DNA of 64,000 nt from Rhodosorus marinus CCMP1338 (GCA_029953675.1 JAMWBK010000005.1:2480001-2544000), one strand, 5' to 3'. Positions 5,975 to 13,495 are shown, counted from the first letter of the stretch. Notes: generated by a model from the sequence alone, not told the origin. A program made the numbers and translations.

Positions 5975-6230
5975 AGAAACTTGGCTGGAACTAGTAGGCA
6001 AGAGGTGGGGCACCATACACCATGTCTGACCACTTGGGTCGCCAACTGGTAGGCTAGGGCCCACCATCCACGGCTCGAAAGTGGTAGGCAGACAGTGGCA
6101 CCATAAAACGACGCCTGACAACTTTCCTCGATCTGAGAACCACAAGGTGGCACCATACAAGATCTCTGACAACTTGGCTACGAACTGGTAGGCAGAGGTT
6201 GCACCATACACAATGTCTGCCAACTCGATC
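5975..6230. repeat. Degenerate tandem repeat, about 5 copies of a ~51-bp unit
   Basis: Consensus CTGACAACTTGGCTACGAACTGGTAGGCAGAGGTGGCACCATACACAATGT recurs with indels between the divergent CDKC and radical-SAM genes. Confidence 0.7.
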
Positions 6231-6763
6231 AACAACCGCAAAACTATCTTCCTACTCAAGGAAGAAAGACAAAAACCACGAGACAGTCTGTCATCAAAAC
6301 TATTGATTGATTCAATCTCTTGAAGGAGTTATTATCGGGAGTCGGTCGGGCCGGATGGACGAAGAAGATACCAATGCAGATTGATATCATAAATGTCAGA
6401 TGACTTTCTGATTAAGATTGTGCCGTATATTGTTTAATTGTTACATGGAAAGTATTCGATAAACTTCGTTCTGTGTTTCATAAGTATTTGAGCCGATGAG
6501 GTAGATAATACGATACTTTTCGGTTTATGTGTTTAAATATTTTTATGGGTTTGTGTGACATTTTTAGGATGGCGGTTTGGATGGATTGGGGTGGTTTTGG
6601 TGGTTTGGTTGGGTTGCGGGCGGAGGTCAGAGGGTAGGTTGAGGGCGGGGGGGGTGTTGGCTATGTACCCTGGGGTTAGAGCTTGAATGTAGAAATGCTC
6701 CGATGCAGGATCTTGTGAGGTGATCAAAAAGTGATCCTGCTGTTCTCTTGGCTATTGAAAAAC

Positions 6764-9700
6764 ATGGAGGCTTTTGTTGGAGGGGTGGATCTGAGATCCA
6801 GCAGTTTCTCCCCGGGGTTGAAGGGCCAGGCTTCTGGTTGTGGACGCAGGCATAGCGTGGCAAGGACAAGGAGGGTGGATATGGTCGTTGAGAGTCCACC
6901 TTCAGAAGAGTTAATGGGTGGGAGCGTCTTGAAGGATCTTGAGGTTGACGGGGCCTGGGAAGGGCTAAAGTCGATTTTGCCGTTTGAGGTGCTGAGAACG
7001 ATTTCAAAACCTGGTAGATATCTCGGAAATGAGAGAGGAGCTGTTATGAAGAACTGGGATCAGAACCAGCTCAGAATGTGTCTGGCATATCCAGAGACGT
7101 ACGAGATCGGGATGAGCAACACTGGTCATGTGATCTTGTATTCGTGCCTGAACGACGTGGATGGAGTGCTCTGCGATAGGTAATTACGCCCTAGTCACGG
7201 AAGATGTCATGATCCAGGACGCTTGCTCGATTGTGAGGATTTTCGTTTCCTCTGACCATTATCTCGTGCATATCATGTTTTAATCTCAACCCTAGGAGCT
7301 ATCTTCCGGCATCAGATATGGGTGCAGCCCTTAAGGACGCAGGGAAGGACTTGTTCGCTGTCGAATCCAAGAGGCCACTCGCAGAGTTTGACGTCTTGGC
7401 GGTATGAATCTTGCTTCTTCGTCCAGAGCAATAGCCTACTCGGCAGTTAGCAAGAGTCAGTCCCATAGTGGCGAGGCCTGCTGACAGTTCTTTTCCGTTC
7501 ACGTTGTTTTCAGATTCCTGTCCACTACGAAATGGGGGCGACGAACTGTCTAGAATTGATGTCCTTGAGCTCAATCCCTATTTCTTGGTCAGAGCGCGAT
7601 GCTGACCCCAGCAAACCATTTGACGTCTCCTCCGGTAGCTACCCGCTTGTATTTGGAGGTGGCCAGACGGTTACTGCTAACCCCGAGCCCTTCGCGGAGT
7701 TTTTTGACTTCTTCGCGCTCGGCGACGGAGAGGAGGTTCTGCCAGCCATAGCGCGGAAAGTCGATGAGTGTAAGAAGCTTGGCTTATCGCGTGTGGAGGT
7801 CCTGGTTAAGCTTGCCCGAGACGTTCCGGGTATCTACGTCCCGATGTTTTATTCAATGCATCAGGATGGGTCTGTGCGAAGGAATAGGGATGACATCCCA
7901 GCCAGGCCGCAGCGTCAGGTATGATCCAGTGCGGAAGCGGGGGCTTTCATTCAGGGACCTTCTCACTTCTCCTCTCTCTGTGTGCCATTTAATTCGCTAA
8001 GGTTGCGACCCCTCAACCGGAGAGGGCTCTTCGACTTGTCCCTTACGTGCAAACAATTCACGATCGCCTCACGGTAGAGATTCGCCGGGGTTGTACTCGA
8101 GGTTGCAGGTTTTGCTTACCGGGAAATCTGAACCGTCCTGCTCGTGATGTGGAACCAGAGAGAGTGATTGAGGGCGTTCTTGAAGGGGTACAGAACTCTG
8201 GATATCGTGAGTTCTCTCTCCTGTCGTTGTCATGCTCCGACTGGCTTTCGCTACCATCTGTGGGCATCGAACTGAAAAATCGTCTACGCGAGCACAACAC
8301 AAACATTAGCCTGACGCTTCCATCGCAAAGAGTCGATCGATTCGATGAGGACATTGCCGTCCTCGTCGCCGGTGGTGAAGAAAAGAAAAGCGGTATTACT
8401 TTTGCCCCAGAGGCTGGGACGCAGAGGCTCAGGGATGTCATCAACAAGGGATTAACCAATGAAGAACTCCTTCGAGGGGTAAAGACTGCGTACCTGCAGG
8501 GCTATGCTCAGGTATGACCTCGAGACCCAAGAAGGAGACACCTTTTCGCATCTCTTTGACACACATCTTCTGAACGAACTCCTGTGCAATAGGTCAAGTT
8601 GTACTTTATGATCGGTTTACCCGGAGAAACGGACGAGGATGTTGTCGGAATCTTTGAAACTGTAAAGTGGCTGCAGAGGGAGTGTAAGGAGAAAGGTCGC
8701 CGCCGCCTTGCGGTGAAACTGACGATATCGAACTTCACCCCAAAACCACATACGCCTTTCCAGTGGCATTCCGTATCAACGGAGGAGTTCAAGCGGAAGC
8801 AGCAGTTGCTGATGAGCTTGTTCAAGTCCCAACGGGATGTCAAGGTGGGAAAGCTTGGAATGTTAATGTCGATGTGACTTGAGTTAGTTCCCAGAGAGTT
8901 CTGAAGGCTCCCCGCGTCCTTTTTCCTCGTTGATCAGTGGAACTTCACGGACGTTCGAATCTCCGCAATGGAGGATTTCGTTGGCCGGGCGGACAGACGC
9001 ATGAGCGCGGTAATTCAGAAAGCGTGGGAAAATGGAGCTTCCATGGACGACTGGTGGATGGACTTAGACGGAGCATATAACGGCTGGAAGACTGCAATAG
9101 ACCAGTGTGGCCTGTCGTGGGAATACAGAAAAACCGCGGATGGAGAATGGAATGTCATGGAAACTCCTCAAGAGCAGGTGAAGGGAAAGAGAGGGTGGTA
9201 AGGGGATGCTTCAACTGTACTAGCGGATGTTGCGGAGGGCACTTTGGGATTTTATGTCCCAGACACTACTTCCTTTCATGACTTCGTCGGTAACCAACCT
9301 TCGCTTCTGAAAACTACTTCCCAGGTTTTACGAAGCACGAAGGAAGGGTTTGGAGTTCAAGACGCTGACTCCAAAGAGCGGATGGGGTGGGTCTGACAGC
9401 AGTGAAGAATCGGCAGATGAGCGCTCCAGTACTTCGCCTCTGGATAGGCCGTTGCCCTGGGACCATATTAATAGCGGGGTCGACAAGGGCTGGCTGCGGG
9501 ATGAGTTGATGAAGGCTCTCTCTGCAAATCTGACGCCGGACTGCTCGTTCGATGAATGCTCTTCTTGCGGAGTTTGTGGCGATGAACTCGGGCACAATGT
9601 GGTCATCCCTCCAGCGCCAATACCCGACTTCAAGGGCCACTATCGGTAAGACTTCGGGTACGTAAGCCCAGCCTGCTGGATTGCGATGCTCATCTACCTC

Positions 9701-10616
9701 GTGTTGTCGTTCGCAGACCAGCACACACTCGTCAGCAGAAGCTGCGTGTACGATTCTCAAGAACCGGCTCGAGCTCTATGATGGGTCATCTCGACGTTAA
9801 CCGCCTGCTCGATAGAGCGATGCTCCGAGCCGGCTTGCCTATTTCTTTCACGAACGGTTTCAACCAGCTTCCTAGAATGCAACCCGCGCAACCTTCCGCA
9901 CTCGGATATACCTCCAACGCGGAAGTCTATGATTTCGACATGGTGGAGCCAGTTGATGTTGGTGAATTCACACATCGACTATCAGAACAGCTACCTCCAA
10001 CATTCTCCATTCAGGTGCTTCTTAATACTACATGGATCTGGAGTATTGACCCTCTTATGCTAATCTTTTTTCTTTTCTGTGCCGTCCAAAATGGTTCCTC
10101 GTACAGGACGCGGAAGAGATTTCCTTATCGAGCCGATCACCTTCTGCAGCGCTTGAGGAACTAGTTTGGGTAGTCGTGCTTGTATCAGAAACGCTACGCG
10201 ATGAGGACAGTTGGAACAAGTGCATCGAAAACATTCGAAATTCTGGTCCAGTCTTGATCGAGAAGAAAACCAAGCGTACAAAGAAAAAGAAGGAGTTGGA
10301 TCTGCGGGAGCCACTACTCAGCGTTGAACGGGCGACCTCGTCAGATAGCGACCCAGTCCTGACGCACGTGGGTGTGGAAGACTGGGATGACACAAGCTGT
10401 ATCATCAAGTTCAGAACCAAAGTGTCATACGAGATGGCCAACCTCAGTCCAGCATCGTTTGCCAAGATGGTCGAAATCATCTCAGGTTCGGAAGTCACTC
10501 TTAGACACGCACACAAGGCCGATATCGTATTCGCCTCCGTGAAGGAACAAAAACCTCCCATCCGTGAGGAACAAGAAAATCCTATTCTTGAGGAAGAAAA
10601 AACCTCCTGCCCTTAA
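6764..10616 (+). CDS. Radical SAM protein (TIGR03960-like) fused to a TIGR03936/DUF2344-like domain, predicted plastid transit peptide, about 9 exons
   Basis: Motifs KPGRYLGNE, LAYPETYEIGMSN, FGGGQTVTANPEPFAEFFDFFALGDGEE, CTRGCRFC (CxxxCxxC, 8092-8115), TFAPEAGTQRLRDVINKG, KLYFMIGLPGET, FTPKPHTPFQW, LPWDHI, CSFDECSSCGVC, then GHLDVNRLLDRAMLRAGLPISFTNGFN. N-terminus MEAFVGG... is Ser/Arg-rich. Confidence 0.88.
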
Positions 10617-10888
10617 GTAAAACTCCAGTTCAGCTCGGTATAACAAGCTGTGCGTTGAAACGCTGTGATGCCCATGTTTCCATGTCGTCGAGTCGAACAT
10701 AGAGCCAGAGGGTGGGATGGGGGTTAGGGGTGATGTAGATCGGCTCAGTTTGTTGAGTATGAAAGTCTCTGACGCAGGGACTTCTGCTTGATAATGGACT
10801 CTAACAACAAAGAATCGGTCTGCTTGAGGAGGATAAGATCAGACTCTTTGAACATAGAATCATTTTCCAAGTTAGTTCGCTCGTCGGG

Positions 10889-13495
10889 ATGTCTGTGATT
10901 CGCCGTCTTCCTGAGGAGGTTGTTCATCGCATTGCAGCTGGTGAGGTGTGTGATCTCGGTTCGGTTCTCTAGTCTGTGCTTCCCTTTTCGTTTTCTCTCC
11001 GGTGATGATTTAGTCGAGCTAGCGAGCGCCTTTGTTCCAACGGTTTTGTCCAGGCTGAGCTGTTGTTGTTTTTTGCAATTCCTTAAAGGTTGTAACGTCC
11101 GCGGCTGCTGCGCTGAAGGAGCTGCTAGAGAATAGCATTGACGCTAGAGCGACGAAGATTAACGTTGGAGTTCGTCAAGGAGGTCTGAAGGTTTTACAGA
11201 TCGTTGACAATGGGAAGGGAATGGCGGTTAGCTGGATCTTAGATCAAATCTATGTACAGTGTCCTTTACATCACATCTCACACTCGTTCGTTGTATTTTC
11301 TAGCCAGAAGATATGCGCATGGCATGTGAAAGGTTCGCTACGAGCAAACTACAGACGTTCGAAGACCTTCAGTCAATAACCAGCTTCGGCTTTCGAGGAG
11401 AAGCACTCGCAAGCATAAGCCAAGTCGCCCGAGTGAAAATTGTATCAATGGTTCCAGGTACTATCGATACTACCAGCCTCATTCTAAGCCTATAGCAGCA
11501 GAGATATCTAATCCGAATATCTTGTCAACTACCCAACTCTGCAGACGCCGTCTGTGCGTACAGTGCGAGCTATGCTGATGGTAAAATTGCTGGAGCAAAC
11601 GGCGGACAAGCTGCCCCAAAACCATGCGCTGGAGTTCCTGGCACAACCGTGACGGTGGAAGACCTGTTTTACAACATGCCAACCCGACGAAGCGCTAACA
11701 GAAATGCATCTGAGGAGTACCGTGCGATTGCGGACATTGTCACCCGGTATTCCATTCGCTACTCGAGTATCGCGTTCACTTGCAAGAGGCTTGGAGATGT
11801 AAGTATCACGATGTGCATATGCAGTGTTTAGTGAAAGCACAAGTTTTCTGTCGTCAGGGGTTTGTTCGGCTTGCCGAGCGCTTACTACTTCCAGAGAGAT
11901 TTTGATGAACCAGATGTCTCTGACGATCTCTCACGTGCTTCTATCTGACTGATAGAATTCTGGATCAGACATAAAGTCAACCATGAATGCTACTGTACTC
12001 GAGAACATCCAGCTGGCTTTTGGGAAGAATCTCGCTCAGGAGCTATTGGACTTCAAGTTCGAGATCGACGGTCTGGGGGTCTCAGGAAGCGGCCTGGTGT
12101 CCAATGCGAACTACAATCTGACCCGACGGACGTTCATTCTGTTCATAAACGGCCGACTTGTCGACTATGCGCCGTTGAAAAAAGCACTTGATTCTACTCA
12201 CTCAGAGTTCAGTCCGAAAGGATCTCATGGCTTCTTCTACTTGGATATTAATATGAGGACGGAGGATCTCGACGTAAACGTCCATCCGACTAAGCGCGAA
12301 GTTCGGTTTCTTCATGGTGCAGAGCTCATTGAGAGCGTTACATCTGCAGTCTCTGATAGGCTTAAGACCAGCCGTACTTCTCGGGTCTACTACTCTCAGT
12401 CTCTCATTGAGTAAGTCCACGATTCATTGGTGCTAGTCTTTTATTTTTAGTCCTAATTCGTTCCGCTTCCGTCTGGACCCTTTTCGCAGGAAGCCAGTGC
12501 CGCGAGCAGAGCAAAGCGAGAGTCAAGTCCCAGATACACCAGCACCGGCTATGCTGGTTCGGACGAGCAAGCGCCCACTTTCAGGAAGAAACCCTTTGGC
12601 GAAAGACCCTCGGAAGATGGTGCGAACAGACGCAAAAATACAAGACGGAGCGATGGAGCAGTTTATAGAGTCAAGACCACAGGTTCTCGGCAGTGGACTG
12701 AGGAGGAGTTCGAGAACGGCTCTTAAACGCTCACGGGAAGCACCCCCGTTGCTGACTAGTGTTCGCAACCTGCAGATGGAATACGAAGCGCAAACGCATG
12801 CAGGCCTTCACGACGTGTTCCGTGAACACTCTTTCGTTGGAGTTGCCGACGGCGACCATGTACTCATACAACATCGGACCAAGCTGATGCTAGTTCTGCT
12901 TCATCCACTGGTGAGGGAATTAATGTATCAGAAGACATTGCTGCAGTTCGCGGATCTTTTGCCGGCGAAGCTCACCTCCCCAGTCCCGATCCGAGAGGTC
13001 GTTCGACTTCGGCTTGAGAAACCCGACCTTAAATTGAAGGAATCAGCGTGCGATCGAGAGGAGATGGCGATCGCGGTAGGTGGAGTTCTCCTCTCCCATT
13101 CAGAAATGCTCCTCGAGTATTTTGGGATACGCATCGTTGATACCAGGGGAAGCGGGCCATCTGTCGATGCGCTTCCGCTGTTGCTTGAACACCACTCGCC
13201 GGCGCCAACTTCTGTGGCTGACCTCATCCTCGGACTCGGCACTGTTGTAAATTGGGAGGAAGAACAGGAATGCTTCAAGGATATTGCAGAACTGATTGCT
13301 GATTGCTACACGTCAGTTGGACAATGGGACCCGACTAACTCGGATCAGCTCGAGCGTTACGAATACATCATCAAACACGCCATCCTACCGGCTACTCGTT
13401 CGGCGTTCTTCCCGCCAAATCACTTCGCAGAAAATAAGGTCGTTCGTGAGGTGGCGTCACTCGAGAGGCTCTATAGAACATTTGAGAGATGTTGA
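10889..13495 (+). CDS. MLH1: DNA mismatch repair protein Mlh1, multi-exon
   Basis: [62 protein letters not shown], and the diagnostic C-terminal LYRTFERC*. Confidence 0.96.

What the first reader, a model, noticed from the sequence alone, without database searches (positions are those of the whole stretch)
6764..10616. Nuclear-encoded, probably plastid-targeted orphan radical-SAM / TruA-like fusion enzyme
Seen: a full-length spliced gene with the CxxxCxxC triad, a second Cys cluster (CSFDECSSCGVC) and a fused C-terminal GHLD...LPISFTNGFN domain, behind a Phe-4 transit-like peptide. Known: TIGR03960 radical-SAM proteins are paired with or fused to TIGR03936, which is distantly related to TruA pseudouridine synthase and proposed to act in RNA modification. 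I know of no established substrate. The fused form occurs in cyanobacteria. Inference: an endosymbiotically transferred, uncharacterised plastid RNA-modifying system kept intact, with about 8 introns gained. The family is often annotated B12-binding, which would matter for plastid cobalamin use, but actual binding is unproven.
Basis: partly seen in the sequence, partly recalled or inferred. Interest (0 to 1): 0.75.

Follow-up and report, generated by a model that had tools for sequence, protein, structure and literature searches.

The report
Plastid-targeted radical SAM / TruA-like fusion gene
This is a real, spliced nuclear gene of the red alga Rhodosorus marinus, inherited from the cyanobacterial ancestor of plastids, that encodes a radical-SAM enzyme of unknown function fused to a catalytically dead pseudouridine-synthase-like domain, probably works on RNA inside the plastid, and turns out to be common in red and green algae.

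Summary
Window 6764-10616 (+) holds a 9-exon, 8-intron gene for a 1,025-aa protein. It is 100% identical to GenBank KAJ8905222.1, a "hypothetical protein" of Rhodosorus marinus, and transcripts support the splicing. It passes the curated cut-offs of TIGR03960 (542.6 bits against 462.3) and TIGR03936/DUF2344 (132.3 against 71.9), and fails MiaB/RimO.

The CxxxCxxC triad and the Cx4Cx2Cx2C cluster are invariant in 120 homologues. The C-terminal domain has the TruA pseudouridine-synthase fold, but the position of TruA's catalytic Asp is never acidic.

A disordered extension of 60-75 aa with Phe-4, shared by red-algal orthologues, fits a rhodophyte plastid transit peptide. Trees place the red-algal proteins with cyanobacteria (100% bootstrap).

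New here:
- In bacteria, RNase E/G lies directly downstream in 38 of 63 loci.
- Red-algal plastid genomes still encode rne.
- Orthologues exist in green algae (Chlamydomonas, Chlorella, Mesostigma, Closterium) and in Euglena.

Best reading: a plastid RNA-directed radical-SAM enzyme linked to RNase E-dependent RNA processing. The substrate, the chemistry and cobalamin use are untested. It is a new member of a known, uncharacterised family, of moderate interest.

The parts
6764..10616 (+). Whole CDS: 9 exons (6764-7179, 7296-7401, 7514-7918, 8002-8511, 8593-8844, 8938-9197, 9325-9645, 9717-10014, 10107-10616) and 8 GT-AG introns of 71-127 nt. Product 1,025 aa.
   Evidence: 100% identical to KAJ8905222.1; transcript protein aligns gap-free across all junctions.
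6764..6988 (+). N-terminal presequence, aa 1 to about 60-75: MEAFVGG... with Phe-4, no hydrophobic signal segment. Presumed rhodophyte-type plastid transit peptide.
   Evidence: pLDDT below 40 for aa 1-60. The YLGNE motif sits at aa 85 here, against a median of 22 in 89 cyanobacterial proteins. Phe at positions 2-5 in 15 of 16 red-algal orthologues. No 19-aa window with Kyte-Doolittle score >= 1.6. 85% of rhodophyte transit peptides carry an N-terminal Phe (PMC4510345).
7124..7843 (+). N-terminal domain, aa 121-284 (Pfam Radical_SAM_N2). It resembles the cobalamin-binding domain of class B radical-SAM enzymes. Contains the invariant C137 (7172-7174). Interrupted by introns 1 and 2.
   Evidence: PF19864 at 147 bits. 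Weak hits to the B12/rSAM families TIGR04013 and TIGR04014. The full model matches MgmA, TsrM and MiaB. No hit to the Pfam B12-binding family at E <= 0.01.
8077..8658 (+). Radical SAM core, aa 335-501. Includes the CxxxCxxC triad C340/C344/C347 (8092-8115) and the invariant C387 (8233-8235). The invariant C510 (8683-8685) lies just beyond. Interrupted by intron 4.
   Evidence: PF04055 at 65 bits. The triad is invariant in 120 sequences. MgmA 9ccb is the only meaningful PDB sequence relative, E 2.4e-6 (the one other row, 9qy8 at E 0.64, is noise).
9175..9427 (+). Linker insertion, aa 643-684 (QVKGKRGWFYEARRKGLEFKTLTPK...). Conserved among red algae and absent from the cyanobacterial proteins aligned. 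Spans intron 6.
   Evidence: Alignments. At the same site green algae and Euglena carry a different basic, Gly-rich insertion (YRGQGGGGKGRxDRG).
9542..9577 (+). Second Cys cluster C723-x4-C728-x2-C731-x2-C734 (CSFDECSSCGVC). Presumed auxiliary [4Fe-4S] site.
   Evidence: All four Cys are invariant in 120 sequences. The motif was also found in the non-cyanobacterial fused proteins. The loop has low pLDDT, as does the radical-SAM triad loop (337-355); expected, on my reading, for metal sites modelled without cofactor.
9739..10532 (+). C-terminal TIGR03936/DUF2344 domain, aa 765 to about 998, with the TruA-type pseudouridine-synthase fold. Contains the HLD...R..DR..LRA helix (9787-9831). Interrupted by intron 8.
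   Evidence: TIGR03936 at 132.3 bits, PF10105 at 127.9 bits. Most 10-residue blocks over aa 761-1000 have pLDDT above 90. Foldseek: PUS3 9enc E 8.8e-8, TruA 1vs3 E 1.4e-7, TM-scores 0.5-0.55. The DUF2344 profile hits only TruA 1vs3 in PDB sequences, E 0.01.
9889..9924 (+). Loop equivalent to the TruA catalytic loop, aa 815-826 (QPSALGYTSNAE). A818 occupies the position of the TruA catalytic Asp. G820 and E826 are invariant.
   Evidence: The HMM alignment places TruA 'AGRTDAGVHA' on DUF2344 'aeALPlGveS'. That column is Pro, Ser, Ala, Thr, Met or Gly, never Asp or Glu, in alignments of 120, 78 and 28 sequences.

Best explanation
What it is. The interval is the nuclear gene NDN08_001731 of the red alga Rhodosorus marinus. 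It descends from a cyanobacterial gene through endosymbiotic transfer. It encodes a precursor with three parts:
1. A presequence of about 60-75 aa of the rhodophyte (N-terminal Phe) type, which sends the protein into the plastid.
2. A TIGR03960 radical-SAM enzyme. This has a class-B-like, B12-domain-like N-terminal domain, the CxxxCxxC cluster that cleaves S-adenosylmethionine, and a Cx4Cx2Cx2C site for a second iron-sulfur cluster.
3. A TIGR03936/DUF2344 domain with the fold of TruA-family pseudouridine synthases but without their catalytic aspartate.

How it most likely works. The dead TruA-like domain acts as the RNA-gripping module, holding a stem-loop of a tRNA, an rRNA or a precursor transcript. 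The radical-SAM core then carries out radical chemistry on a nucleotide; a C-H functionalisation such as methylation is most plausible. This step belongs to the RNase E/G-dependent RNA-maturation or ribosome-biogenesis pathway of cyanobacteria and plastids.

Shown: the gene model, family membership, the conserved cysteines, the fold, the missing Asp, the cyanobacterial ancestry, the N-terminal extension, and the linkage to rne/rng.

Inferred: plastid location, an RNA substrate, the type of chemistry, and coupling to RNase E.
For: Gene and family.

Conserved Cys sites.

Fold of the C-terminal domain:
- Foldseek hits to PUS3, TruA and PUS1 at E 1e-7 to 1e-6, covering the whole domain.
- TruA is the only sequence-profile hit in the PDB.
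- Matches further down the list include Trypanosoma mitoribosomal SSU assemblosome chains (6sga, 9hny). These are, as far as I recall, catalytically inactive pseudouridine-synthase-like proteins that act as RNA-binding assembly factors; I did not check this.

RNA-pathway context:
- RNase E/G (PF10150, 313 bits) lies directly downstream on the same strand in 38 of 63 bacterial loci with enough flank: 18 of 34 cyanobacterial and 20 of 29 from other phyla.
- The median gap to it is 125 nt over the 42 RNase E/G neighbours found among the 76 loci analysed.
- RNase HII, L21 and Obg lie further downstream.

Plastid side:
- Red-algal plastid genomes encode rne, next to rpl27-rpl21 (PMC3716797, PMC5217408).
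- Presequence features.
- The Euglena orthologue carries a presequence with two hydrophobic segments, typical of Euglena plastid import.

Ancestry: red algae plus cyanobacteria 100/100 bootstrap, red algae monophyletic 100/100.

Basic insertions at the same linker site in red and green algae fit nucleic-acid binding.
Against: - No experiment on any family member was found.
- Gene linkage to rne/rng is missing in about 40% of loci. It could reflect a shared operon for ribosome or cell-envelope genes rather than shared function.
- The closest structural and sequence relative of the radical-SAM part, MgmA, modifies a protein, not RNA.
- TM-scores to TruA are moderate (about 0.5), and the sequence E-value is only 0.01.
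- The presequence carries several acidic residues (13% D+E), and no targeting predictor could be run.
- Land plants keep a plastid RNase E (PMC2486463) but showed no orthologue among the top hits. So the enzyme is not indispensable to RNase E function.
Confidence: 0.5

Rival explanations
1. It is a protein-modifying radical-SAM enzyme. It would install a post-translational modification, for example a methylation, on RNase E/G or on a ribosomal protein encoded nearby (L21 or L27). The TruA-like domain would serve as a docking scaffold on a ribonucleoprotein.
For: The best structural hit and the only meaningful PDB sequence hit of the radical-SAM part is MgmA, a protein glutamine C-methylase. 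RimO and lipoyl synthase, also protein-directed, appear among the fold matches. The neighbouring genes encode proteins (RNase E/G, L21, Obg) that could be targets.
Against: The whole C-terminal domain has the fold of enzymes that bind RNA stem-loops. MiaB, which acts on RNA, matches the core almost as well as MgmA (TM-score normalised to the target 0.56 against 0.60). Basic insertions in the algal proteins suggest nucleic-acid binding.
Confidence: 0.15
2. The protein is not imported into the plastid. It would work in mitochondria or the cytosol, and the N-terminal extension is another kind of signal or merely a linker.
For: No localisation data exist. No targeting predictor was available. The presequence is only moderately hydroxylated (S+T 17%) and has 13% acidic residues.
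Against: Phe at positions 2-5 is conserved in 15 of 16 red-algal orthologues, the hallmark of rhodophyte transit peptides (PMC4510345). The protein is of cyanobacterial ancestry. Its conserved gene partner RNase E is encoded in red-algal plastid genomes. The Euglena orthologue has a bipartite hydrophobic presequence typical of Euglena plastid proteins.
Confidence: 0.1
3. It acts on a small molecule or in cofactor biosynthesis rather than on a macromolecule. The TruA-like domain would have been re-used as a ligand-binding or oligomerisation domain.
For: Many radical-SAM enzymes with a B12-like domain act on small molecules. There are weak HMM hits to BzaD and to a lipid-biosynthesis family (E 1e-3 to 4e-3). 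The catalytic Asp of the TruA fold is lost.
Against: Those HMM scores are far below the cut-offs (16-19 bits against 360-450). No biosynthetic genes are conserved next to it; the conserved neighbours are RNA-metabolism and ribosome genes.
Confidence: 0.1
4. It is a bifunctional enzyme whose C-terminal domain is an active pseudouridine synthase, or it is a MiaB/RimO-type methylthiotransferase.
For: TruA-family fold. MiaB and RimO are among the fold matches of the core.
Against: The column of the TruA catalytic Asp is never Asp or Glu in 120, 78 and 28 sequences, and no Pfam pseudouridine-synthase family is hit. MiaB/RimO TIGR00089 scores 24.4 bits against a cut-off of 251. There is no TRAM domain and no three-Cys N-terminal cluster.
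Confidence: 0.03

Closest known systems
TIGR03960 / TIGR03936 (DUF2344, PF10105) radical-SAM system of bacteria, in particular the fused cyanobacterial form
   Same: Both curated models are passed. The domain order is the same, and so are the invariant Cys motifs. Identity is 50-54% over 90% of the length, and the protein falls in the same clade.
   Different: It is nuclear and interrupted by 8 spliceosomal introns. It carries a transit-peptide-like extension of 60-75 aa and a linker insertion conserved among red algae. It is no longer next to rne, which in red algae stays in the plastid genome.
TruA-family pseudouridine synthases (TruA, PUS1, PUS3)
   Same: The C-terminal domain has the same fold over its whole length (Foldseek E about 1e-7, TM-score about 0.5). 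There is marginal but specific sequence similarity, including the 'LN..LP' strand after the catalytic loop.
   Different: The catalytic Asp is replaced by Pro, Ser or Ala (Ala in R. marinus). No pseudouridine-synthase Pfam family is hit. The domain is fused to a radical-SAM enzyme.
Class B (cobalamin-dependent) radical-SAM methylases: MgmA (9ccb), TsrM (6wte)
   Same: These are the best structural matches of the N-terminal domain plus core (E 4e-9 and 4e-7). MgmA is also the best PDB sequence match. NCBI names the family 'B12-binding'.
   Different: There is no hit to the Pfam B12-binding family. HMM scores to class B families are far below cut-off. This protein has an extra 4-Cys cluster and an extra TruA-like domain. 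Cobalamin binding is untested.
MiaB / RimO methylthiotransferases
   Same: Three-part plan: an N-terminal flavodoxin-like domain, a radical-SAM core and a C-terminal RNA-binding domain. MiaB-RNA complexes match the model (TM-score normalised to the target 0.56).
   Different: TIGR00089 scores only 24 bits against a cut-off of 251. The auxiliary Cys motif lies after the core, not in the N-terminal domain. The RNA-binding module is TruA-like, not TRAM.

Membership tests
TIGR03960 (rSAM_fuse_unch) radical SAM family | Whole-protein HMM score above the curated cut-off | tested here: met
   542.6 bits against a cut-off of 462.3, E 1.1e-162, aa 75-628 plus a second stretch.
TIGR03960 (rSAM_fuse_unch) radical SAM family | CxxxCxxC radical-SAM cluster motif, plus the family's conserved C-terminal Cx4Cx2Cx2C motif | tested here: met
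   C340/C344/C347 and C723/C728/C731/C734 are present and invariant in 120 homologues.
TIGR03936 / DUF2344 (PF10105) radical SAM-associated protein | HMM score above the curated cut-off, and encoded next to or fused with TIGR03960 | tested here: met
   132.3 bits against 71.9. PF10105 at 127.9 bits against 23.8. Fused in one polypeptide.
TruA-family pseudouridine synthase | Pseudouridine-synthase fold | tested here: met
   All top 20 Foldseek PDB hits of the C-terminal domain are pseudouridine synthases: 19 TruA-family (PUS3, TruA, PUS1) and one PUS10, at E 9e-8 to 2e-5.
TruA-family pseudouridine synthase | Catalytic aspartate in the GRTD loop | tested here: not met
   The aligned column is Pro, Ser, Ala, Thr, Met or Gly, never Asp or Glu. 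It is A818 in this protein.
TruA-family pseudouridine synthase | Match to the Pfam/NCBIfam pseudouridine-synthase models | tested here: not met
   No such family at E <= 0.01 in Pfam or NCBIfam.
MiaB/RimO methylthiotransferases | TIGR00089 score above cut-off; an N-terminal three-Cys cluster domain; a TRAM domain | tested here: not met
   24.4 bits against 251. Only one invariant Cys (C137) in the N-terminal domain. No TRAM hit.
Class B cobalamin-dependent radical SAM enzymes | N-terminal cobalamin-binding domain recognisable by sequence (Pfam B12-binding) | tested here: not met
   Pfam assigns PF19864 (Radical_SAM_N2) and no B12-binding family at E <= 0.01. The only other signal is sub-threshold hits to TIGR04013/04014/04190.
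Class B cobalamin-dependent radical SAM enzymes | Structural similarity of the N-terminal domain plus core to solved class B enzymes | tested here: met
   MgmA 9ccb E 4e-9, TM-score normalised to the target 0.60; TsrM 6wte E 4e-7. MiaB matches nearly as well, so this does not discriminate.
Class B cobalamin-dependent radical SAM enzymes | Actual cobalamin binding and use | not testable with these tools
   Needs purified protein (UV-visible spectroscopy, mass spectrometry of the cofactor).
Rhodophyte-type plastid-targeted precursor | N-terminal extension relative to bacterial homologues, with Phe among the first residues and no signal peptide | tested here: met
   The YLGNE motif is at aa 85, against a median of 22 in 89 cyanobacterial proteins. 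Phe-4 here, and Phe at positions 2-5 in 15 of 16 red-algal orthologues. aa 1-60 are disordered. No hydrophobic segment.
Rhodophyte-type plastid-targeted precursor | Demonstrated import into the plastid | not testable with these tools
   No localisation data were found. The Euglena plastid-proteome supplements held here do not list the orthologue.

The most novel reading that the evidence does not exclude
The enzyme is a genuinely cobalamin-dependent RNA methylase, or a related radical RNA-modifying enzyme, that works inside plastids together with RNase E. That would mean algal plastids import and use vitamin B12.

The taxa in which I found the gene are ones I recall as users or auxotrophs of B12: red algae, green algae up to Closterium, and Euglena. 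This recollection was not tested. No land plant appeared among the top hits, and land plants have no B12-dependent enzymes.
Probability: 0.12. Interest if true: 0.8.

Novelty: new member of a known kind. Interest (0 to 1): 0.45.

Why it matters
TIGR03960/TIGR03936 is a large bacterial family: 2,459 clusters at 50% identity match at E <= 1e-30. I could find no published function for it. This gene shows that the complete fused system was kept after the origin of plastids in both red and green algae, which argues for a conserved role inside the organelle.

Two results make the question directly testable:
- A catalytically dead TruA-type domain is attached to a radical-SAM core with two clusters.
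- The gene is linked to RNase E/G across phyla.

Knockouts are feasible in model cyanobacteria and in Chlamydomonas reinhardtii (orthologue CHLRE_09g390801v5). If the B12-binding label proved true, it would also be the first cobalamin enzyme placed in a plastid.

Tried and rejected
- Literature searches for DUF2344, TIGR03960, TIGR03936, PF10105, PF19864, COG5011, the InterPro ids, the locus tags, 'radical SAM' with 'RNase E', Cre09.g390801 and EG_transcript_2742. They gave no functional study, only incidental mentions.
- A second homologue search with only aa 596-756, meant to catch eukaryotes that share the linker insertion. It collected 15 candidates, all fragments, and was wasted. The exhaustive representative search plus cluster look-up did the job instead.
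- The Euglena plastid-proteome preprint and its supplements held here. They do not mention the orthologue.
- Tandem Repeats Finder upstream of the gene. It found nothing.
- MiaB/RimO membership: rejected on HMM score.
- Active pseudouridine synthase: rejected on the missing Asp.
- Cyanobacterial contamination of the assembly: rejected because of the 8 spliceosomal introns, the transcript support and the eukaryotic neighbours.
- Whether C137, C387 and C510 form a third cluster. This could not be checked because model coordinates are not returned.
- A single transfer against two separate transfers for the red and green lineages. The neighbour-joining trees do not resolve this: red plus green was recovered in 21 of 100 and 6 of 60 bootstraps.
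Full report
**1. Observation**

Reading 6000-11400 and joining nine + strand exons at GT-AG borders gives a 3,078-nt CDS from the ATG at 6764 to the TAA ending at 10616. It has eight introns of 71-127 nt.

The 1,025-aa product is 100% identical to GenBank KAJ8905222.1, 'hypothetical protein NDN08_001731 [Rhodosorus marinus]'. That record's longest contig is 3.19 Mb. Transcript-derived proteins of another R. marinus strain (MMETSP) are 93-94% identical. One of them, P0124, aligns without a gap over aa 1-1018, across all eight junctions.

- CTRGCRFC at aa 340-347
- CSFDECSSCGVC at aa 723-734
- GHLD...LPISFTNGFN at aa 780-806
- Phe-4

**2. Family**

NCBIfam gives TIGR03960 at 542.6 bits (cut-off 462.3) and TIGR03936 at 132.3 bits (cut-off 71.9). 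MiaB/RimO TIGR00089 reaches only 24.4 bits against 251. The B12/radical-SAM families reach 15-42 bits against cut-offs of 250-550.

Pfam gives Radical_SAM_N2 (aa 121-284), Radical_SAM (aa 335-501) and DUF2344 (aa 765-933).

In an alignment of 120 homologues, these cysteines are all invariant:
- the triad C340/C344/C347
- the four Cys C723/C728/C731/C734
- three further Cys: C137, C387 and C510

The exhaustive search of cluster representatives finds 2,459 clusters at E <= 1e-30. No paper on the family's function was found.

**3. Structure**

The full-length AlphaFold2 model has mean pLDDT 77 and pTM 0.80.
- aa 1-60 are disordered.
- The two Cys-rich loops have low confidence, which I read as expected for metal sites modelled without cofactors.
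- Most 10-residue blocks of the C-terminal domain (aa 761-1000) are above pLDDT 90.

Against the PDB, the N-terminal domain plus core match these structures:

| Structure | Kind | E-value | TM-score (normalised to target) |
|---|---|---|---|
| MgmA 9ccb | class B Gln methylase | 4e-9 | 0.60 |
| TsrM | class B methyltransferase | 4e-7 | 0.44 |
| MiaB-RNA complexes | methylthiotransferase | 3e-6 | 0.56 |

The C-terminal domain matches TruA-family pseudouridine synthases. When modelled alone (pLDDT 84.6), its top 20 hits are all pseudouridine synthases. Nineteen are from the TruA family (PUS3, TruA, PUS1) and one is PUS10. Examples are 9enc at E 8.8e-8 and 1vs3 at E 1.4e-7, with TM-scores of 0.5-0.55.

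A sequence profile of the domain that includes non-cyanobacterial members (A2) hits a single PDB sequence at E <= 10. That hit is TruA of Thermus thermophilus, at E 0.01. It aligns TruA's catalytic loop AGRTDAGVHA with the DUF2344 consensus aeALPlGveS.

The column of the catalytic Asp is Pro, Ser, Ala, Thr, Met or Gly and never acidic, in alignments of 120, 78 and 28 sequences. In R. marinus it is A818.

So the 'TruA-like' claim holds for fold and probable homology. The domain cannot be a pseudouridine synthase of the standard mechanism.

By sequence, the only meaningful solved relative of the whole protein is MgmA, through the core only, at E 2.4e-6.

**4. Origin and distribution**

The best named hits are red algae: Porphyridium at 57%, then Agarophyton, Eucheuma and Gracilaria. 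Hundreds of cyanobacterial fused proteins follow at 50-54% identity over 90% of the length. Other bacteria are 31-37% identical.

Neighbour-joining trees were built on 802-806 columns.

| Grouping | Bootstrap support |
|---|---|
| Red algae monophyletic | 100% |
| Red algae + green lineage + cyanobacteria, against other bacteria | 100% |

Melainabacteria fall outside that clade. Within the red algae, the order follows red-algal classes.

The representative search and cluster look-ups revealed a second eukaryotic group. It contains Euglena gracilis EG_transcript_2742 and proteins on marine metagenome scaffolds whose neighbouring genes are eukaryotic. Searching with one of those proteins showed named orthologues in:
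- Chlamydomonas reinhardtii (CHLRE_09g390801v5), C. incerta, Volvox, Pleodorina
- Chlorella, Micractinium, Parachlorella, Botryococcus, Ulva, a pedinophyte
- the streptophyte algae Mesostigma, Chlorokybus and Closterium

No land plant appeared among the top 120 hits. Their absence was not tested further.

The trees do not settle whether the red and green genes come from one transfer. Both lineages carry an insertion at the same linker site, basic in each case but different in sequence.

The Porphyridium orthologue is a single uninterrupted ORF. The R. marinus genome is reported as intron-rich for a red alga, with 24,821 introns in 8,392 genes (PMC10250338). The eight introns are therefore gains after the transfer.

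**5. Targeting**

Red-algal orthologues place the conserved YLGNE motif at aa 81-130, against a median of aa 22 in 89 cyanobacterial proteins. Fifteen of 16 complete N-termini have Phe at positions 2-5 (MEAF, MALFF, MAFV, MTFV and so on).

An N-terminal Phe is reported in 85% of rhodophyte transit peptides (PMC4510345). The extension is predicted disordered and has no hydrophobic segment.

The Euglena orthologue has two hydrophobic segments, at about aa 9-30 and about aa 92-113. From general knowledge, that is the pattern of Euglena plastid presequences. Green-algal orthologues also have N-terminal extensions, without the Phe.

Plastid import is therefore well supported by sequence, but it has not been shown.

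**6. Functional context**

I analysed the neighbourhoods of 80 bacterial loci, one genome per species. An RNase E/G gene (PF10150, 313 bits) was found next to the gene in 42 of the 76 loci that could be analysed, with a median gap of 125 nt.

Among the 63 loci with at least 2 kb of downstream flank, it lies within 2.5 kb downstream on the same strand in 38:
- 18 of 34 cyanobacterial loci
- 20 of 29 loci from Desulfobacterota, Actinomycetes, Firmicutes and Chloroflexota

Further downstream lie RNase HII in cyanobacteria, and L21 and Obg in the other phyla.

Red-algal plastid genomes still encode rne. In florideophytes it sits in a conserved block next to rpl27 and rpl21 (PMC3716797, PMC5217408). 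The likely partner is therefore made inside the organelle that the presequence points to.

**7. Mechanism**

The most economical reading is an RNA-directed radical-SAM enzyme.
- A TruA-derived, catalytically dead domain holds an RNA stem-loop.
- The core, with its SAM cluster and a fully Cys-ligated second cluster, performs radical chemistry on a nucleotide.
- The process belongs to RNase E/G-dependent RNA maturation or ribosome biogenesis.

The invariant C387 lies at the end of a predicted core strand (E379-381). From general knowledge of radical-SAM barrels, such strand ends line the active site. It could act as the catalytic Cys residues of RlmN do. This is speculation.

The rivals are:
- a protein substrate, since MgmA is the nearest relative
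- a location outside the plastid
- a small-molecule substrate

Cobalamin binding is neither supported nor excluded. Pfam does not call a B12-binding domain. The fold resembles class B enzymes and MiaB about equally.

**8. Verdict**

Three points refine it:
- The pseudouridine-synthase catalytic residue is missing.
- Orthologues are widespread in green algae and present in Euglena.
- There is a conserved link to RNase E/G.

The gene is already deposited as 'hypothetical protein', and the family is catalogued but uncharacterised. It is therefore a new member of a known kind, of moderate interest. Its main value is as a well-defined, experimentally tractable orphan enzyme of cyanobacteria and algal plastids.

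Noticed in passing
window 6009-6228 (+), upstream of the gene: Three dispersed copies of a 29-nt element (GGCACCATACACCATGTCTGACCACTTGG; 79-100% identity, spaced 140 and 51 nt apart), interleaved with two copies of a 21-nt element. This is not a tandem array. A G/T-rich stretch follows at about 6570-6660.
   Followed up: partly
window about 10892 onward (+), 275 nt downstream of the stop codon: The next gene is also spliced. It starts [20 protein letters not shown]... and matches the GHKL ATPase domain (HATPase_c_3, 59.8 bits). It looks like a MutL/MLH1-type mismatch-repair protein and is unrelated to the finding.
   Followed up: partly
L082 8001-11177 and proteins P0136, P0326 and others: At the same linker site where red algae have VKGxRGW...LDxKTLxPK, green-algal and Euglena orthologues share a conserved Gly/Arg-rich insertion (LGDxRYRGQGGGGKGRxDRGxLAD). 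It resembles RGG-type RNA-binding motifs. Whether the two insertions are homologous is not resolved.
   Followed up: partly
L024 (CALRUP020000010.1), locus 8001-10397: A contig labelled 'MAG: Acidovorax caeni' carries a fused gene that groups inside the Synechococcus/Cyanobium clade, with RNase E downstream. It is probably a picocyanobacterial contig mis-binned into a betaproteobacterial MAG.
   Followed up: no
P0412: One source names a family member 'radical SAM superfamily enzyme YgiQ (UPF0313 family)'. This looks like a mis-annotation, because the protein carries the PF19864 + PF04055 + PF10105 architecture.
   Followed up: no
L001-L041, upstream of the cyanobacterial genes: In 17 cyanobacterial loci a small STAS-domain protein (anti-sigma-factor antagonist type, PF01740) lies directly upstream on the same strand, at a median distance of 152 nt. 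Its significance is unknown.
   Followed up: no
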